Virus record (IMG/VR): IMGVR_UViG_3300042010_000106
Coordinates: 1-64,000 of that record
DNA length: 64,000 bases
Direction: 5' to 3' (one strand)
The position numbers were made by a program, and so were the translations under genes. Each line of letters begins with the position of its first letter. Position 1 is the stretch's first letter. The notes below the pieces were generated by a model, which was not told the origin of the DNA, did not search any database, and saw only the letters and a list, made by a program, of their open reading frames with translations. Below are positions 557 to 63,758 of the stretch, piece by piece.

Positions 557-1645
557 ATGAAAATTGCCGTGTACGCAATTGCGAAAAACGAAAGCCATAA
601 CGTGGTTCGTTGGCTGGAAAATATCAAGGATGCAGATGGGATCTTTGTACTGGATACAGGCAGTACAGACGGCACAGTTTCTTTGCTGGAACAGGGCGGT
701 GCAACGGTCAGTAAAATGTCCGCACACAAACCGTTCCGATTCGATCACGCACGTAACGAGGCGATGAACCTTGTACCTGAAGAATTCGACGTGCTTGTCA
801 TGTTGGATTTTGATGAAATGTTGATGAATGGCTGGCGCCAAATCATCGAAGAACAATTCACGTGTGATGCTGCAAACTACACGCTGATTTACGATCATGA
901 CGAACAAGGAAACGTAACAATTTCCTATCCGCGCATGGCAATTACTCGGCGTGGTATTGGTACATGGCAATATCCAGTGCACGAAGTTTTAACCGTGCCT
1001 GAAGGAACCGCAACGCAAGATATCACGCTGGCCTGCGTTCACTACGGCGAACCAAAAGCACCGGGTCACTATTTCGACCTGCTGAAAATGGCGCACGAAG
1101 ACGATCCAACCTGTGCACGTTCCGCGTCGTATTTGGCGCGTGAATATTACGGGATGCAGAACTGGCAAATGGCCGATGCGTTGTACCGGAAATATTTGGA
1201 GCTTGAAACATATGCCCCATTCAAATCCGATGCAGCACGCAAAATTGGCAGCATGTGTACGGATTACTACAATGCCGAATGGTGGTACAAACAGGCAGTG
1301 CAATACTGTTCTGACATTCGCGAATCGCATTGCGATCTTGCATCGTTTTATTTCAAACACAAACAATACGAACATGCCATCGCAAGTTTGCGTACGGCGC
1401 TCACCATCGAACGTCCCAATTATCGAATGATTTATTCGGATGTTTATTACGGCCCGATCTGGTGCCGTCACATGCTGCTGGCGAGTTACCAGCAAGCAGG
1501 GAATCTTCGTGAAGCGATCAAAATCATGCGTGAATTTCAGCAACCTGATTCGCCTATGACGGATGCACTTCGCGCTGACATTCTACTGCTTCAGCAAAAA
1601 GTACAGGATGCCTTCCATGTTTATAGCACTTGCTTGGGCGTTTAA
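557..1645 (+). CDS. glycosyltransferase family 2 with C-terminal TPR-like repeats
   Basis: IAKNE, VLDTGSTDGT, FDHARNEA, LDFDE (DxD), PVHE motifs; helical TPR-like C-half. Confidence 0.9.
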   Translation: MKIAVYAIAKNESHNVVRWLENIKDADGIFVLDTGSTDGTVSLLEQGGATVSKMSAHKPFRFDHARNEAMNLVPEEFDVLVMLDFDEMLMNGWRQIIEEQFTCDAANYTLIYDHDEQGNVTISYPRMAITRRGIGTWQYPVHEVLTVPEGTATQDITLACVHYGEPKAPGHYFDLLKMAHEDDPTCARSASYLAREYYGMQNWQMADALYRKYLELETYAPFKSDAARKIGSMCTDYYNAEWWYKQAVQYCSDIRESHCDLASFYFKHKQYEHAIASLRTALTIERPNYRMIYSDVYYGPIWCRHMLLASYQQAGNLREAIKIMREFQQPDSPMTDALRADILLLQQKVQDAFHVYSTCLGV

Positions 1646-3046: not shown

Positions 3047-3382
3047 ATGCTCTCATTTCTTTGCGATCCAACTGAGCGCCATTTGCCAATGCACCAACGC
3101 ACGGTAGTACACGTGTGTGACGGTGCTAAACGAATTGCGACACTCAGTGCAACCGACGATGAATCAGAAGATCGCAGCGAGTCAACCGCAATGTGGACGG
3201 CTCGCGTGCACCACAAACAATTCGATCCTTTCATGCACGATCATGAACCAAATGAAGAAGAAAACAACGTTCACGTTGCAGCTTCTGAAGAAGGTTTGGT
3301 ATCGCTGCACAACCCAACAAAAATGGACATTTCTTCTGCGCGCCAGTGGGTACGCGACGTATACACGGGAGCAAAAGATTAA
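3047..3382 (+). CDS. hypothetical protein (head cluster)
   Basis: GAGG SD; stop overlaps next start. Confidence 0.7.
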   Translation: MLSFLCDPTERHLPMHQRTVVHVCDGAKRIATLSATDDESEDRSESTAMWTARVHHKQFDPFMHDHEPNEEENNVHVAASEEGLVSLHNPTKMDISSARQWVRDVYTGAKD

Positions 3383-4191
3383 TGGAAAATCAATTCGAAG
3401 CAATGGCCTTTTCGTTGGGTGAGCCGCCTAGCGCACCGACTGAATTGCACGGCATTACAAAGAATGGTGATGGTTCCATTACCGTTAGTGGTGGCGTTGC
3501 AGGCGATCCGGGTGGTGCAAGTCATACGCTGGAAGCAAACATTTGGTTGCCGAAAGCTGCTGAATATCACGGGCTTTCAAAGGACATTAACGATTACATT
3601 CTCGTTCCTGTTCCTGCAATGATTACCGATCTTCCTAACACGAATGGTGACTCTGTTTCGCTTAAAGAATTCCTCGCATGGAACTCTGATTGCGGTCGCC
3701 AAGCGTACAAGACTTGGGAAGGTCGGCCAATGTACATTGAACACCAGCATTCGCCTGAATGGGTACGGGGTTTGATTCTCGGTTCCTATATGCGCCCAAC
3801 GCGCTTTAAAAACGTTCAGAAAATGGTGTTGCTTGCTGCATTGGATCGTACCCGCGACCCACAACGTGTTGCCCGTGTATTGTCACGTGAATTGAATACG
3901 TATTCCATGGGCATGTTTTATAGTGCTTATACGTGTTCCATTTGCAGTGCCCGTGCCGGTAAAGGTATTGGTTCGCCATGCCTGCATACACGCCCGCGCA
4001 AACCAACGTATCGTCAAATGGATGGACGTTTGGCTTATCGTCGTTGCGAAAACATTACTGGTTTTGAGCTTTCATTGCTTGAAAACTTAGGTGGTCGTAG
4101 CGGCGTTGATGGCTACCGTTCTGGTTTCGGCGATCCTTCTTACGTGTCTGCAATTGGTGACACAATTCTCGACCCTCGGAGTATGCGTTAA
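3382..4191 (+). CDS. putative prohead protease with Zn-ribbon insert
   Basis: PNTNGD, EHQH, YSMG, CSIC..CLH..C, GFELSLL motifs; upstream of scaffold and capsid; start set by TAATG overlap. Confidence 0.65.
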   Translation: MENQFEAMAFSLGEPPSAPTELHGITKNGDGSITVSGGVAGDPGGASHTLEANIWLPKAAEYHGLSKDINDYILVPVPAMITDLPNTNGDSVSLKEFLAWNSDCGRQAYKTWEGRPMYIEHQHSPEWVRGLILGSYMRPTRFKNVQKMVLLAALDRTRDPQRVARVLSRELNTYSMGMFYSAYTCSICSARAGKGIGSPCLHTRPRKPTYRQMDGRLAYRRCENITGFELSLLENLGGRSGVDGYRSGFGDPSYVSAIGDTILDPRSMR

Positions 4192-7838: not shown

Positions 7839-8921
7839 ATGACTACTGCATTCAAAAGCGCTCGTATGGTACTGAAGAACGGCGCCCCACTCGAAGACCT
7901 GCGCTTCGGTAAGGGCCGCGAAATGGCTCTGTCGGCTTCGACCGGCGAGTTCAACGCCAGCGACAAGAAAGACCTTGCCCGCCAAATCGGCAACCTGATG
8001 GCCGCTTTCGCTTCCGGCGAAATCGTTCAACAAAAAGACGAAATCGCTGTTGCGAACCATCGCGAAATTCTCGCTGACGCACTGGCTTCCGAAGCAAACT
8101 GGAAAGCGTTGGGCGCGAACATCGCTCAACAAATTTACGAACAAGCAGACCGCGACGGTTTCCTGCGTAAAATTTCCGTAGGTAACACTCTGCGTCAAGG
8201 TGAAGTGCAGCGCGTTCCAATGCCTCCGCACGATACCTTCGCTGTAATCGCCACCGCTAACGCTGGTGTTGGTTATCAGCACATTCGCCAGAAAGTTTTC
8301 CAGCCTGAAGAATTCGAAATCATCGCCAACGTGCGCGTTTCGCAACTCGACATGCAACAAGTGAACGGCGATCTGCTGGAACACGCTTACAACGATGGTC
8401 TGCAAAGCATCATGGTTGCCGAAGACAAACTGTGGAAAAAAGCTGCCGATATGACCGTGGGTGTTGTTAACCCACTGGAATACATCGCCGGTGAACTGAC
8501 CACCAAAAACCTCGGCAAACTGCGTCAAGCCGTAGCCCAATGGAACCTGCCAGCTTCGACCGCGATTATCGCGAACGATTACTGGTCGGACATCATCGGT
8601 TCGAACGATTTCGCAACCTTCCTCGATCCAATCACCAAATACGATCTGGCCCTGAACGGCCAACTCGGTACGCTGGTTGGTCTGAACCTGATCACTGACG
8701 CATTCCGTCAGCCGAATCAGAAGGTTCTGAACAAAGGCGAAATCTACGTTGTTTCCGACGCACAAAACCACGCTGCATATTCGACCCGTGGCGGCATCAC
8801 CTCCACTCCAGTAGACGGCGCCTTCGAAGGCACCACTTCGAAAGGTTGGTTGCTGAGCGAAATGTTCTCGTTCATCCTGACCAACAACCGTTCGGTTGCT
8901 AAAGGTCAGCGTCTGATCTAA
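7839..8921 (+). CDS. major capsid protein (HK97-like fold)
   Basis: 360 aa; 'GQLGTLVGLNLITD' P-domain-like motif; position after scaffold; very strong codon bias. Confidence 0.8.
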   Translation: MTTAFKSARMVLKNGAPLEDLRFGKGREMALSASTGEFNASDKKDLARQIGNLMAAFASGEIVQQKDEIAVANHREILADALASEANWKALGANIAQQIYEQADRDGFLRKISVGNTLRQGEVQRVPMPPHDTFAVIATANAGVGYQHIRQKVFQPEEFEIIANVRVSQLDMQQVNGDLLEHAYNDGLQSIMVAEDKLWKKAADMTVGVVNPLEYIAGELTTKNLGKLRQAVAQWNLPASTAIIANDYWSDIIGSNDFATFLDPITKYDLALNGQLGTLVGLNLITDAFRQPNQKVLNKGEIYVVSDAQNHAAYSTRGGITSTPVDGAFEGTTSKGWLLSEMFSFILTNNRSVAKGQRLI

Positions 8922-60337: not shown

Positions 60338-60614
60338 ATATTTGGTACGGAATGCAATCAACCAACGGCCAACCGCAAAGCACGAACACTTTGTTAGCGA
60401 CACGCTTATGACCGCCGCGTTAAACGATTTGAAACGTGACGGTTACGAACGCGTATACGCTCTTATGGTTCGTGTACGGGATATGCCACCGGGCGCCGCT
60501 ATTGTGTTCGACCTGAGCGAGCGTAAGTGTCTACGGATCGCCCACGGGTGCAGCTACGACACACAGCGCCTAATAGGGCCGCTGCTGGGCTACGGGACTA
60601 TCTCAAGGGCTTGA
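60327..60614 (+). CDS. hypothetical protein
   Basis: overlapping tiling ORF. Confidence 0.6.
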   Translation: MVTKYLVRNAINQRPTAKHEHFVSDTLMTAALNDLKRDGYERVYALMVRVRDMPPGAAIVFDLSERKCLRIAHGCSYDTQRLIGPLLGYGTISRA

Positions 60615-60701
60615 CAGGGTTTGTGGGCGCAGTACAATGAAATCCAACACGGACACACTGTGCCCGCGATTCCTACCATCACGTACAAAGGTAAGTTTCC
60701 C
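60611..60701 (+). promoter_or_regulatory. sigma70-type promoter + divergent leader, copy 5
   Basis: TTGACA-16-TACAAT-5-CCA, 5' hairpin, TCACGTACAAAGGTAAGTTTCCCATG. Confidence 0.8.
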
Positions 60702-62623: not shown

Positions 62624-62656
62624 TTCGTTGTGCATTCTTGCGAGTGCACAGCCGAG
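62624..62656 (+). other. putative RNase III processing hairpin
   Basis: TTCGTTGTGCA-TTC-TTGC-GAG-TGCACAGCCGAG. Confidence 0.55.
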
Positions 62657-62679
62657 ACAAAACACAGGAGCAACAAAAC

Positions 62680-63411
62680 GTGTCTGCAAAAACTAGCCTG
62701 CAAAAAGAAGCAGAGAAAACGCACAAACGCATTCTGACAATTCTGTCTGAACAGTTGGGCGTTAAGGAAACCGAGTTGTCGCTAGAAAGCACCATGGCAG
62801 ACCACGGCGGTGATTCCCTCGACGCTGTTGAAATCATCATGGCGCTTGAGGAAGAATTCGAAGTCGAAATCACCGACTGCGAAATGGACAAGATCAAAAC
62901 GCCGCGCCAAGTAGTCGCGTTGATTCTGCCAAAGATTCACCTGCCAAGTCTTTCGTTCGATGACGCGTATATAGCTGCCTCCGAGCTGGAAGACATAAAG
63001 CCAACGAAGAAAAAACCGGCAGATAAAAAACCAGCACTGAAGAAAGTGGTACTCGCTGACGGTGCAACGTTGGTTCCCGGCGAGTCACGCAAACGGCACC
63101 TCGACGATTTGTTCGAATACACCATGAGCGATTCCGCCATGATGGAATTCGTGAAAGCCTTCAACACGGTTTTCAGCAATTCGGAATCTGCTTACCTGTA
63201 CGCTAGCAGAACGCCGAACGACAGCGATGCGTGGCGGATTCAAATGACAACCCGTCTGTCTGGTGAAGCCGTGGACGCAATTGCGCGCTTTGTAGAAGAC
63301 GCCGGTTTCTCTTTCGTCAAATCCACCGAACACACGGTGCGATTGCACGGCAGTAACCACGTCGGCATTGTCACAGCGATTCACCTGTCACTGACAACGT
63401 ACGGCCTCTAA
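62680..63411 (+). CDS. acyl carrier protein domain fused to an unknown C-terminal domain
   Basis: ILSEQLGV.E.E..LES....GGDSLDAVEIIMALEEEFEVEI.D.E..KIKT (AcpP-like, DSL Ser intact); AGGAG SD, GTG start. Confidence 0.9.
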   Translation: MSAKTSLQKEAEKTHKRILTILSEQLGVKETELSLESTMADHGGDSLDAVEIIMALEEEFEVEITDCEMDKIKTPRQVVALILPKIHLPSLSFDDAYIAASELEDIKPTKKKPADKKPALKKVVLADGATLVPGESRKRHLDDLFEYTMSDSAMMEFVKAFNTVFSNSESAYLYASRTPNDSDAWRIQMTTRLSGEAVDAIARFVEDAGFSFVKSTEHTVRLHGSNHVGIVTAIHLSLTTYGL

Positions 63412-63422
63412 GGAAAGAAATC

Positions 63423-63758
63423 ATGGTTCGCGAAAAACTTTACATCGGCTCCAAAGTTATCGTCTGGAAAAACAAAAACACGTGGGACGACGACGCTGTA
63501 CAGTTCATGGTTCCTCAAACTGCAATTCTGTTTGAGCGCGACCGGGACACATTGTCTGACGACGGGTACGGCGAACACTACGGCGTACTGTTTTTGAACG
63601 ACGACGGCAGCGCCTCACATTTCGAATGGTGGGTTGAGGGTGACGAATGCGTGTTGGTCGATAACGAGCTGATCGCGAACCAAGATTTCATTTACGCAAA
63701 TCGCGGTTTGCTGGAAACGTGCGACGGCGAAGACGAACCGGACGAAGACGAATTGTAA
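63423..63758 (+). CDS. hypothetical acidic protein
   Basis: AAGGA SD. Confidence 0.7.
   Translation: MVREKLYIGSKVIVWKNKNTWDDDAVQFMVPQTAILFERDRDTLSDDGYGEHYGVLFLNDDGSASHFEWWVEGDECVLVDNELIANQDFIYANRGLLETCDGEDEPDEDEL

What the first reader, a model, noticed from the sequence alone, without database searches (positions are those of the whole stretch)
62680..63411. Phage-encoded acyl carrier protein domain fused to a Lys-rich linker and an unknown domain
Seen: the N-terminal ~85 aa closely follow bacterial AcpP (GGDSLDAVEIIMALEEEFEVEI, phosphopantetheine Ser intact). It is followed by KPTKKKPADKKPALKK and a ~110-aa unrecognised domain. No fatty-acid, PKS or PPTase genes are nearby; it sits in the early region behind a processing-like hairpin. 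Established: host ACP is a hub that binds FAS enzymes, SpoT and MukB. Inference: an ACP mimic or decoy that diverts lipid synthesis, the stringent response or an ACP-dependent host function, or that targets the C-terminal effector to ACP partners.
Basis: partly seen in the sequence, partly recalled or inferred. Interest (0 to 1): 0.65.

Follow-up and report, generated by a model that had tools for sequence, protein, structure and literature searches.

The report
Phage acyl carrier protein with tethered domain
A soil jumbo phage encodes a genuine bacterial-type acyl carrier protein joined by a floppy linker to a previously undescribed small domain. This layout is found only in a small clade of related phages, and it suggests the phage taps or redirects the host's lipid-carrier system rather than just carrying a spare copy of the host gene.

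Summary
Window 62680-63411 (+) is a real 243-aa gene with a GTG start and an AGGAG ribosome-binding site 9 nt upstream.

- **Carrier domain:** residues 15-88 are an AcpP-type acyl carrier domain (Pfam PP-binding, 56 bits). It is about 51% identical to solved bacterial AcpPs, and the GGDSLD serine is invariant in all 11 family members.
- **Linker:** residues 108-135 form a fast-evolving, disordered Lys/Pro linker.
- **C-terminal domain (CTD):** residues 136-243 form a conserved domain under purifying selection. It has no Pfam or PHROG family and was found only fused to this ACP.
- **CTD fold:** the predicted fold (pLDDT 82) is closest to phiKZ gp244, the protein that caps capsid pentons (Z 7.6, next 4.5-5.0). 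There is no sequence-level support for this.
- **Partners:** the complete 312-kb genome, from the Lu11/HRDY3/PaBG group of soil phages, has no PPTase, FAS, PKS or adenylation gene.
- **Upstream hairpin:** it is real, strand-specific and supported by covariation. It sits 34 nt before the start codon and occurs only twice in the genome.

Best reading (0.4): a carrier modified and loaded by the host, tethered swinging-arm style to an anchoring or partner domain. Decoy, virion-display and cis-enzyme readings remain open. I rate it a new variant of a known kind, of moderate interest.

The parts
62627..62652 (+). Conserved RNA-type hairpin in the leader. 11-bp stem (62627-62637 with 62642-62652), 4-nt loop, invariant U.G wobble. 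It starts 10 nt after the upstream gene's stop codon. The conserved GAGTG block ends 34 nt before the GTG start.
   Evidence: Folding. Present upstream of the orthologous gene in 8 other contigs, with compensatory stem changes. Pair counts: 93% of cells paired, 3 pairs changed on both sides, covariation score above all 500 shuffles, and collapse when the pairing is slid. Covariance model: 46 bits on +, 12 bits on -. No U tract, so not an intrinsic terminator. No Rfam family.
62666..62670 (+). Shine-Dalgarno AGGAG, 9 nt before the GTG start.
   Evidence: Read directly from the sequence. The same GGAG-spacer-GTG arrangement occurs in the homologous loci.
62680..63411 (+). CDS of the ACP-linker-CTD fusion protein (243 aa, P0001), including the stop codon.
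   Evidence: Eight full-length homologues at 47-97% identity and three distant ones found by profile search.
62722..62943 (+). AcpP-type acyl carrier domain (residues 15-88), preceded by a 14-residue N-terminal helix extension. The attachment serine Ser46 is at 62815-62817.
   Evidence: Pfam PF00550, PHROG 5934, genome scan hit 62728-62925, PDB AcpP matches. Helices predicted at 6-26, 38-42, 48-60, 66-69 and 75-86. The GGDSLD motif is invariant in the eight close homologues; the three distant members carry GGDSLD or GADSLD with the serine kept.
62944..63000 (+). Extra conserved helix after the carrier domain (residues 89-107; invariant F93, A96, A100, L103, D105, K107).
   Evidence: Alignment. 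Helix 93-101 in the full-length model.
63001..63084 (+). Disordered Lys/Pro/Ala-rich linker (residues 108-135).
   Evidence: pLDDT 27-35. pI 9.9 and only 14-25% identity among homologues that are not near-identical strains. In near-identical strains most changes here replace amino acids.
63085..63408 (+). Conserved C-terminal alpha/beta domain (residues 136-243). It is a new sequence family, always fused to the ACP.
   Evidence: No Pfam or PHROG hit. Not found free-standing and no second copy in the genome. Model pLDDT 82, pTM 0.74. Best fold match is phiKZ gp244. In a strain variant, 8 third-position changes against 2 replacements.

Best explanation
The gene encodes a tethered carrier protein.

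- **Carrier.** The N-terminal domain is a working AcpP-type acyl carrier. The phage has no phosphopantetheinyl transferase, so the host's AcpS must attach the cofactor. Because the recognition helix II is essentially that of AcpP, host fatty-acid-synthesis enzymes (FabD and onward) can load it.
- **Linker.** A 30-45-residue disordered Lys/Pro linker acts as a swinging arm.
- **C-terminal domain.** This lineage-specific domain of about 108 aa is the anchoring or partner module. It fixes the carrier, and whatever acyl group it bears, to a particular phage or host assembly.

The net effect is that the phage plugs a privately addressed carrier into the host acyl-ACP hub and draws acyl groups, or ACP-client enzymes, to a place of its own choosing.

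**Shown:** domain identities, conservation of the serine, linker disorder, CTD conservation and selection, and absence of phage-encoded partners.
**Inferred:** modification by host AcpS, loading by host FAS, and the anchoring role and target of the CTD.
For: - ACP identity and an AcpP-like helix II. The closest free-standing ACPs are ordinary 75-109-aa proteins, mostly 75-89 aa, at 42-57% identity.
- Ser46 within the (G/A)DSLD motif is kept in all 11 members, even where the CTD is only 23-33% identical. This argues that the holo form is needed.
- No PPTase, FabD, KS, FabZ, PlsC or adenylating enzyme anywhere in the complete genome. One search gave only a 13-bit sub-threshold SDR hit.
- Two conserved domains are separated by a linker that is 14-25% identical and has very low pLDDT. 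This is the layout of swinging-arm carriers.
- The CTD is under purifying selection, folds confidently on its own and is never seen without the ACP.
- Other phage ACPs in related lineages carry different C-terminal extensions (pf16 gp58) or none. The C-terminal part therefore looks like an exchangeable addressing module.
Against: - No partner of the CTD is identified. Every neighbouring gene is without a family.
- The immediately downstream gene is not conserved in the distant members.
- There is no expression or modification data. The runs found are DNA metagenomes or contigs, apart from one short run guessed to be RNA that held none of this gene.
- Serine conservation could also reflect the structural role of the DSL turn.
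- The conserved polar residues of the CTD (R192, E217-H218, H235, S182, W185) could mean catalysis or ligand binding rather than anchoring.
Confidence: 0.4

Rival explanations
1. Decoy or inhibitor. The protein is made in quantity early and titrates AcpS, FabD, PlsB or other AcpP clients, as apo- or holo-protein, shutting down or diverting host lipid synthesis or another ACP-dependent function. The CTD only oligomerises or stabilises it.
For: - Helix II is virtually that of AcpP.
- The phage has no pathway of its own to use a carrier.
- The gene sits among small unknown genes typical of host-takeover blocks, with a near-consensus sigma-70-type promoter 2 kb upstream.
- A preprint predicts a phage ACP-host FabZ contact (10.64898/2026.03.01.708874).
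- From general knowledge, not tested here: excess apo-ACP is toxic in E. coli.
Against: - A pure decoy does not need a 108-aa conserved extra domain under purifying selection, nor an invariant attachment serine.
- Most phage ACPs are free-standing, so the fusion must add something specific.
Confidence: 0.2
2. Virion display. The CTD is a gp244-like capsid-vertex (penton-capping) decoration domain, and the ACP is held out from the capsid on the flexible linker. Particles would then carry a phosphopantetheinylated, possibly acylated, surface protein.
For: - The only fold match that stands out is phiKZ gp244. Foldseek E 2.2e-3, probability 1.00, TM 0.58/0.56 over 106 columns. VIA-align Z 7.6 over 98 of 108 residues, against 5.0 and 4.5 for the next entry. 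The chain's identity was confirmed.
- The secondary-structure content is similar (three helices and a sheet of about four strands).
- In BFVD the four best hits, and six of the ten best, are 95-122-aa proteins of Pseudomonas jumbo phages. PA7, by its size, looks like the gp244 counterpart, but this was not checked.
- gp244 carries its free arm at the N terminus, which is where the linker joins here.
- An ACP was detected by LC-MS/MS in Eneladusvirus virions (PMC7760394).
Against: - There is no sequence-level similarity (hhalign E 0.089, probability 0.6%).
- Z 7-8 is typical of best chance matches for small alpha/beta models (tool note), and rmsd is 4.7 A.
- This phage's capsid is of the Lu11/PaBG type, not the phiKZ type. 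In phiKZ the gp244 site is made by the C-terminal arm of that phage's own capsid protein.
- The gene lies 20 kb or more from the head and tail genes I identified, among small unknown genes.
- MS detection of an abundant acidic protein in virion preparations is weak evidence.
Confidence: 0.15
3. Cis-acting enzyme or ligand-binding domain. The CTD acts on, or binds, what the pantetheine arm carries (for example transfer, hydrolysis or sequestration of an acyl or aminoacyl group). The protein would then be a minimal self-contained carrier-plus-catalyst module making a phage-specific product.
For: - Conserved polar residues cluster on adjacent predicted strands: S182, W185, R192, E217-H218, H235.
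- The fusion is obligate, and the linker is long enough for the arm to reach the CTD.
- The full-length model has pTM 0.61 despite a 40-residue disordered linker. This may hint at docked domains, but that is my inference and was not checked.
Against: - No fold or profile match to any acyltransferase, thioesterase, PPTase or hydrolase.
- The ACP-CTD complex prediction gave no answer.
- 108 aa is small for an enzyme.
Confidence: 0.15
4. Nucleic-acid-binding regulator. The Lys-rich linker plus an Alba/SpoVS/S6-like alpha/beta domain binds the conserved leader hairpin, giving autoregulation, and the ACP reports metabolic state.
For: - The second tier of fold matches is Alba, SpoVS, R3H and ribosomal S6-type domains (Z 4-4.5).
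- The linker is basic.
- A conserved hairpin precedes this gene, and in L006 also a second ACP gene.
Against: - Z 4-4.5 is background for this fold class.
- In the distant members P0014 and P0017 the linker contains several acidic residues and does not look strongly basic, by inspection only.
- Nothing links the hairpin to this protein rather than to any other factor.
Confidence: 0.05

Closest known systems
Bacterial type II FAS acyl carrier protein AcpP (PF00550; e.g. PDB 1ACP/1L0H, 7PDI)
   Same: Helical-bundle carrier domain. DSL attachment motif. Acidic recognition helix II almost identical. About 51% identity over 65 residues.
   Different: It carries a 14-residue N-terminal extension, an extra conserved fifth helix, a basic disordered linker and a 108-aa C-terminal domain. 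It is encoded by a phage that has no FAS or PPTase genes.
Free-standing phage ACPs (phrog_5934; phiRSL1 ORF083, Motura gp339, Bajun, BCSR5, Yersinia fHe-Yen9-04 g153, Eneladusvirus)
   Same: Orphan ACP genes in jumbo phages, in blocks of small unknown genes, function unknown. The PHROG match is E 2.4e-16.
   Different: Those are 77-87-aa single-domain proteins, 33-44% identical. Their downstream genes are not homologues of this CTD. This domain is closer to bacterial AcpP than to them.
Pseudomonas phage pf16 gp58 (163-aa 'acyl carrier protein')
   Same: A phage ACP with a C-terminal extension, in a related neighbourhood upstream of the DUF8224/phrog_1735 gene. The ACP part is 42% identical.
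   Different: Only the ACP part aligns to the family profile. The roughly 85-aa extension has no Lys-rich linker.
phiKZ gp244 (PDB 8Y6V chain C), penton-capping outer capsid protein
   Same: Best structural match of the CTD. Similar size, with three helices plus a sheet of about four strands. Aligned over 98 of 108 residues, Z 7.6, TM 0.58.
   Different: 6-8% identity and no profile similarity. Different phage lineage and capsid protein. gp244 is not fused to anything.
Swinging-arm carrier architectures (lipoyl domains of 2-oxo-acid dehydrogenase E2; BCCP of acetyl-CoA carboxylase). Comparison from general knowledge.
   Same: A small prosthetic-group carrier domain joined by a flexible Pro/Ala/Lys-rich linker to a domain that anchors it in an assembly.
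   Different: Different carrier fold and cofactor. Here the carrier is N-terminal and the anchor is an unknown 108-aa domain. No catalytic core is identified. This is an analogy of design, not homology.

Membership tests
Acyl carrier protein, PP-binding superfamily (PF00550), AcpP type | Profile match above the curated threshold | tested here: met
   56.3 bits against a cut-off of 20.8, residues 17-82 covering the full model 2-67/67. The genome scan gave 58 bits.
Acyl carrier protein, PP-binding superfamily (PF00550), AcpP type | Conserved (D)SL serine at the N terminus of helix II for 4'-phosphopantetheine attachment | tested here: met
   GGDSLD with Ser46, aligned to the AcpP attachment serine. 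Invariant in 11 of 11 family members.
Acyl carrier protein, PP-binding superfamily (PF00550), AcpP type | Helical-bundle fold | tested here: met
   The AlphaFold model has helices 6-26, 38-42, 48-60, 66-69 and 75-86, with block pLDDT 57-84. Confidence is moderate.
Acyl carrier protein, PP-binding superfamily (PF00550), AcpP type | Acidic helix II recognition surface for AcpS and FAS enzymes | tested here: met
   The helix II segment matches AcpP nearly residue for residue in the HMMER alignments.
Acyl carrier protein, PP-binding superfamily (PF00550), AcpP type | Is actually phosphopantetheinylated and acylated | not testable with these tools
   Needs mass spectrometry of the expressed protein.
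Acyl carrier protein, PP-binding superfamily (PF00550), AcpP type | Cognate PPTase and acyl-processing enzymes encoded alongside | tested here: not met
   PF01648, PF00501, PF00109, PF00698, PF07977 and PF01553 give no hit in the complete 312-kb genome. PF00106 gives only a 13-bit sub-threshold hit. Host enzymes would be required.
Phage ACP family phrog_5934 | Profile match | tested here: met
   E 2.4e-16, residues 9-83 against profile positions 10-85/93. Only the N-terminal third of the protein belongs to it.
phiKZ gp244-like penton-capping decoration proteins | Shared fold over the whole domain | tested here: inconclusive
   It is the top hit in two independent searches: Z 7.6, rmsd 4.7 A, 98 residues, TM 0.58. 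It stands 2.6-3.1 Z units above the next entry but within the range of chance best hits.
phiKZ gp244-like penton-capping decoration proteins | Detectable sequence or profile homology | tested here: not met
   hhalign of the CTD profile against gp244: probability 0.6%, E 0.089.
phiKZ gp244-like penton-capping decoration proteins | Presence in the virion on the pentons | not testable with these tools
   No cultured phage carries the gene, and there is no proteome or map.
phiKZ gp244-like penton-capping decoration proteins | Occurs with a phiKZ-type capsid, whose capsid-protein C-terminal arm forms the binding site | tested here: not met
   The major head protein (window 7839-8921, phrog_2522) is 67-73% identical to those of Lu11, HRDY3 and PaBG. 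The gp244 site is described in PMC11297242.

The most novel reading that the evidence does not exclude
The C-terminal domain is a true structural relative of phiKZ gp244 and caps the capsid pentons. Each vertex of this jumbo phage would then display five AcpP-like carrier domains on flexible arms. The virion would carry host-installed phosphopantetheine (and perhaps fatty-acyl) groups on its surface, for example for membrane or surface adhesion in soil, or to engage host ACP-binding proteins at entry.
Probability: 0.12. Interest if true: 0.85.

Novelty: new variant of a known kind. Interest (0 to 1): 0.5.

Why it matters
Orphan acyl carrier proteins are annotated in many jumbo phages, yet none has a demonstrated function. 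This clade offers a handle. The carrier is permanently tied to a second conserved domain whose partner, once found, would show where a phage sends a host-loaded acyl carrier. That could be into lipid metabolism, onto a phage assembly or onto the virion.

The protein is small, soluble-looking and easy to test: mass spectrometry for the cofactor, a Ser46Ala control, and pull-downs with each half.

The covarying leader hairpin marks a tiny co-regulated gene set that includes both ACP genes in one relative. It gives a second, independent entry point into how this gene block is controlled.

Tried and rejected
- **Free-standing CTD.** Word-indexed search of the CTD alone found none. A profile search of 1.84 billion representatives found only ACP fusions, plus three repeat proteins (P0013, P0015, P0016). 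I regard those three as spurious repeat-driven hits.
- **Other collections.** IMG/VR scan with the CTD profile: none. ESM Atlas by features: no usable hit. ESM Atlas by structure: TM 0.51 or less with mixed families.
- **Split-gene (Rosetta-stone) test.** The genes directly after the free ACPs of Motura and phiRSL1 are not CTD homologues.
- **AcpS-like or other ACP-enzyme identity for the CTD.** No Pfam hit even at E 1, and no such fold among the matches.
- **Complex prediction, ACP domain against CTD.** Verdict 'no answer'. It is reported here only and is not used as evidence either way.
- **Neighbour-based inference.** About 20 flanking proteins have no informative Pfam or PHROG match. The downstream gene is conserved only among closer relatives.
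- **Expression and processing evidence from public runs.** All holders are soil or rhizosphere DNA metagenomes kept as contigs. One short run guessed to be RNA held two small pieces that do not include this gene. No starts, ends or joints could be read.
- **Hairpin identity.** Rfam gave no family. The hairpin has no U tract and is not listed by the terminator scan.
- **Head-protease cleavage motif in the helix-5/linker region.** The candidate glutamate is not conserved.

Full report
**1. What is there**

The window is the first 64 kb of a complete 312,325-bp virus record with direct terminal repeats.

- Its major head protein (window 7839-8921, phrog_2522) is 73%, 71.5% and 67% identical to those of Pseudomonas phages Lu11, HRDY3 and PaBG.
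- Near-identical DNA occurs in rhizosphere and soil metagenomes from several studies.
- The flagged ORF runs from GTG 62680 to the stop at 63409-63411 and encodes 243 aa.
- AGGAG lies 9 nt upstream of the start.
- Orthologues in eight other contigs begin at the equivalent codon, mostly also GTG. Automatic 255-aa calls (P0002/P0003) start at the in-frame GTG 62644, inside a conserved hairpin.

**2. The N-terminal domain is a real AcpP-type carrier**

- Pfam PP-binding matches residues 17-82 over the whole model, at 56.3 bits against a cut-off of 20.8.
- PHROG 5934 'acyl carrier protein' matches at E 2.4e-16.
- Against solved structures the best 60 matches are all acyl carrier proteins, led by bacterial type II AcpPs. 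The printed alignment to 7pdi_A has 33 identities in 65 columns, and helix II is nearly the same as in AcpP.
- The nearest free-standing ACPs in 5.8 billion proteins are ordinary 75-109-aa proteins, mostly 75-89 aa, at 42-57% identity.
- Identity to other phage ACPs is lower, at 33-44%.
- Ser46 in GGDSLD is invariant in the eight close homologues. It is also kept in three distant ones whose C-terminal domains are only 23-33% identical.

**3. Architecture**

Segment identities to the six homologues that are not near-identical strains:

| Segment | Residues | Identity |
|---|---|---|
| ACP | 15-88 | 62-74% |
| Extra conserved helix | 89-107 | 42-58% |
| Linker | 108-135 | 14-25% |
| C-terminal domain (CTD) | 136-243 | 40-79% |

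- The linker has pI 9.9 and block pLDDT 27-35.
- In a strain variant assembled in another study (run X3, corresponding to P0003), the CTD shows 8 third-position changes against 2 replacements. Most linker changes alter the amino acid.
- The protein is thus two selected domains joined by a free-evolving tether.

**4. The C-terminal domain**

- It has no Pfam or PHROG family.
- It was not found free-standing, either by the word-indexed search or by an exhaustive profile search of 1.84 billion representatives. The only credible extra hits, P0012, P0014 and P0017, are again ACP-linker-CTD proteins of 218-232 aa.
- There are no further copies in IMG/VR, and there is no paralogue in the genome.
- With an 11-sequence alignment it folds at mean pLDDT 82 and pTM 0.74, as helix-helix-strand-helix-strand-strand.
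- Foldseek against the PDB gives one standout, 8y6v_C: E 2.2e-3, probability 1.00, TM 0.58/0.56.
- An independent all-against-representatives alignment gives the same chain at Z 7.6 over 98 residues (rmsd 4.7 A), with the next entry at 5.0 or 4.5.
- I confirmed that this chain is phiKZ gp244. According to PMC11297242, gp244 forms a five-membered ring capping each penton on the outside of the capsid. It has three helices, a four-stranded sheet and a free N-terminal arm.
- In BFVD the four best hits, and six of the ten best, are 95-122-aa uncharacterised proteins of Pseudomonas jumbo phages: PA7, PS119XW, Psa21, Phabio and PhiPA3.
- Against this, profile comparison with gp244 is not significant, Z 7-8 is within the tool's stated chance range, and this phage has a Lu11/PaBG-type capsid rather than a phiKZ-type one.
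- I treat the gp244 resemblance as a lead, not as membership.

**5. Context**

- No carrier-protein enzyme is encoded anywhere in the genome.
- About twenty neighbouring proteins have no informative family.
- Gene order is conserved in relatives: a 63-64-aa gene, the fusion, a 106-193-aa acidic-tailed protein, a 312-315-aa protein, a 112-114-aa protein and so on. In the contigs long enough to show it, this runs to a 667-669-aa DUF8224/phrog_1735 protein about 7 kb downstream.
- That large protein has homologues in more than 500 phage records. In pf16 it lies about 0.5 kb from a 163-aa ACP that carries a different C-terminal extension.
- Free ACPs of Motura, phiRSL1 and Bajun are single-domain proteins, and the genes tested after them (Motura, phiRSL1) are unrelated to the CTD.
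- The C-terminal part of phage ACPs therefore looks like a variable add-on. This fits an addressing or partner module.

**6. The hairpin**

- The stem-loop at 62627-62652 is conserved upstream of every orthologue, with compensatory swaps in the stem, a variable loop of 4-6 nt and an invariant U.G pair.
- Pair counting gives 93% paired cells, three pairs changed on both sides, and a covariation score that no shuffle reached. The pairing collapses when the 3' arm is slid.
- A covariance model scores the + strand at 46 bits and the - strand at 12 bits. In the whole genome it finds only one more copy, at G000 65089-65122.
- That second copy is also 34 nt before a start codon, that of a 93-aa gene, and it too is conserved in relatives.
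- In one relative (L006), weaker copies precede a second, free-standing 87-aa ACP and a 67-aa gene.
- It is not an intrinsic terminator and matches no Rfam family.
- It is best described as a leader RNA element shared by a small gene set: an operator, a 5'-end stabiliser or a processing site. Which of these it is could not be tested.

**7. Mechanism**

I commit to a host-serviced, tethered carrier at confidence 0.4. Host AcpS installs the cofactor. Host FAS enzymes recognise the unchanged helix II and load it. The disordered linker lets the arm swing. The CTD fixes it to a specific partner or assembly.

| Rival | Confidence |
|---|---|
| Stoichiometric decoy of AcpP clients | 0.2 |
| Capsid-vertex display through a gp244-like CTD | 0.15 |
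| CTD acting in cis on the arm's cargo | 0.15 |
| RNA-binding regulator | 0.05 |

- The invariant serine and the selected extra domain weigh against a passive decoy.
- The lack of any sequence signal, and the different capsid type, weigh against virion display.
- The lack of any enzyme-like fold weighs against catalysis.
- A complex prediction of ACP against CTD returned 'no answer' and is not used.

**8. Novelty**

Phage ACPs are known and annotated, so the kind is known. The obligate ACP-linker-CTD architecture, the CTD family and the leader hairpin are, as far as these searches show, undescribed. They are confined to about a dozen soil and rhizosphere phage sequences. I rate this a new variant of a known kind, with interest 0.5.

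**9. Operators' notes**

No alternative genetic code was used. No step had to be referred.

Noticed in passing
G000 65089-65122 (= L017:1189-1222, L002:9089-9122), just beyond the window: Second and only other strong copy of the leader hairpin in the 312-kb genome. Its GAGTG block ends 34 nt before the ATG (about 65147) of a 93-aa unknown gene. It is conserved at the same place in L003, L010, L011, L012 and L013.
   Followed up: partly
L006:3311-3348 and L006:3383-3646: A relative that carries the fusion also has a free-standing 87-aa ACP (P0037) about 1.1 kb downstream, preceded by the same hairpin motif (23 bits). Another copy, at L006:4356-4387, precedes a 67-aa gene. The hairpin seems to mark a small regulon that includes ACP genes.
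   Followed up: partly
window 62644 against 62680: Automatic gene calls in public data (P0002/P0003, 255 aa) start at a GTG inside the hairpin. The ribosome-binding site and the homologue alignment support 62680. The weak GTG start is itself conserved in most orthologues.
   Followed up: yes
G000 70706-72709 (L002:14706-16709): A 667-aa protein (phrog_1735; DUF8224 in precomputed Pfam). It has full-length homologues at 44-57% identity in more than 500 phage records, including Lu11, HRDY3, pf16 and phages recorded under Klebsiella, Salmonella, Dickeya, Caulobacter and Bacillus. Function is unknown, and it is sometimes annotated as 'DNA-directed RNA polymerase'. It is syntenic with the ACP gene in this lineage and in pf16.
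   Followed up: partly
L009:5992-6483 (Pseudomonas phage pf16 gp58): It is annotated as an acyl carrier protein but is 163 aa long: an ACP plus a roughly 85-aa C-terminal extension that does not align with the CTD family profile. It is flanked by its own annotated promoter and terminators.
   Followed up: partly
window 60611-60638 (+): TTGACA-16-TACAAT, the only 11-of-12 sigma-70-type promoter match in the whole genome. It lies about 2 kb upstream of the ACP gene on the same strand. This is weak support for host-RNAP (early) transcription of the block.
   Followed up: partly
window 63423-63758 (+): The downstream 111-aa gene has a strongly acidic C-terminal tail. It is conserved in closer relatives, and in three of them it is extended by a further C-terminal domain of roughly 60 aa. 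It is not conserved in the distant loci L007 and L008. Strains in runs X3 and X4 carry a 9-nt in-frame insertion (GACGAACCG) after 63731, within the acidic tail.
   Followed up: partly
P0010 (254 aa) and P0011 (356 aa), metagenomic proteins: These are other AcpP-like domains fused to unrelated extensions. P0010 has an acidic linker plus an unknown C-terminal part. P0011 has an unknown N-terminal domain plus a Cys-rich C-terminal part. ACP fusions to unknown domains may be more common than annotation suggests.
   Followed up: no
window 557-1645 (+): A predicted beta-1,4-glycosyltransferase (phrog_13126, E 1e-101) lies at the very start of the genome, next to head genes (protease at 3346-4191, major head protein at 7839-8921).
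   Followed up: no
L007:5965-6321: In the distant relative that carries P0014, a GNAT acetyltransferase gene lies about 3.7 kb upstream of the ACP fusion. It is the only recognisable acyl-transfer enzyme seen near any family member, and no counterpart was seen near the gene in this window.
   Followed up: no
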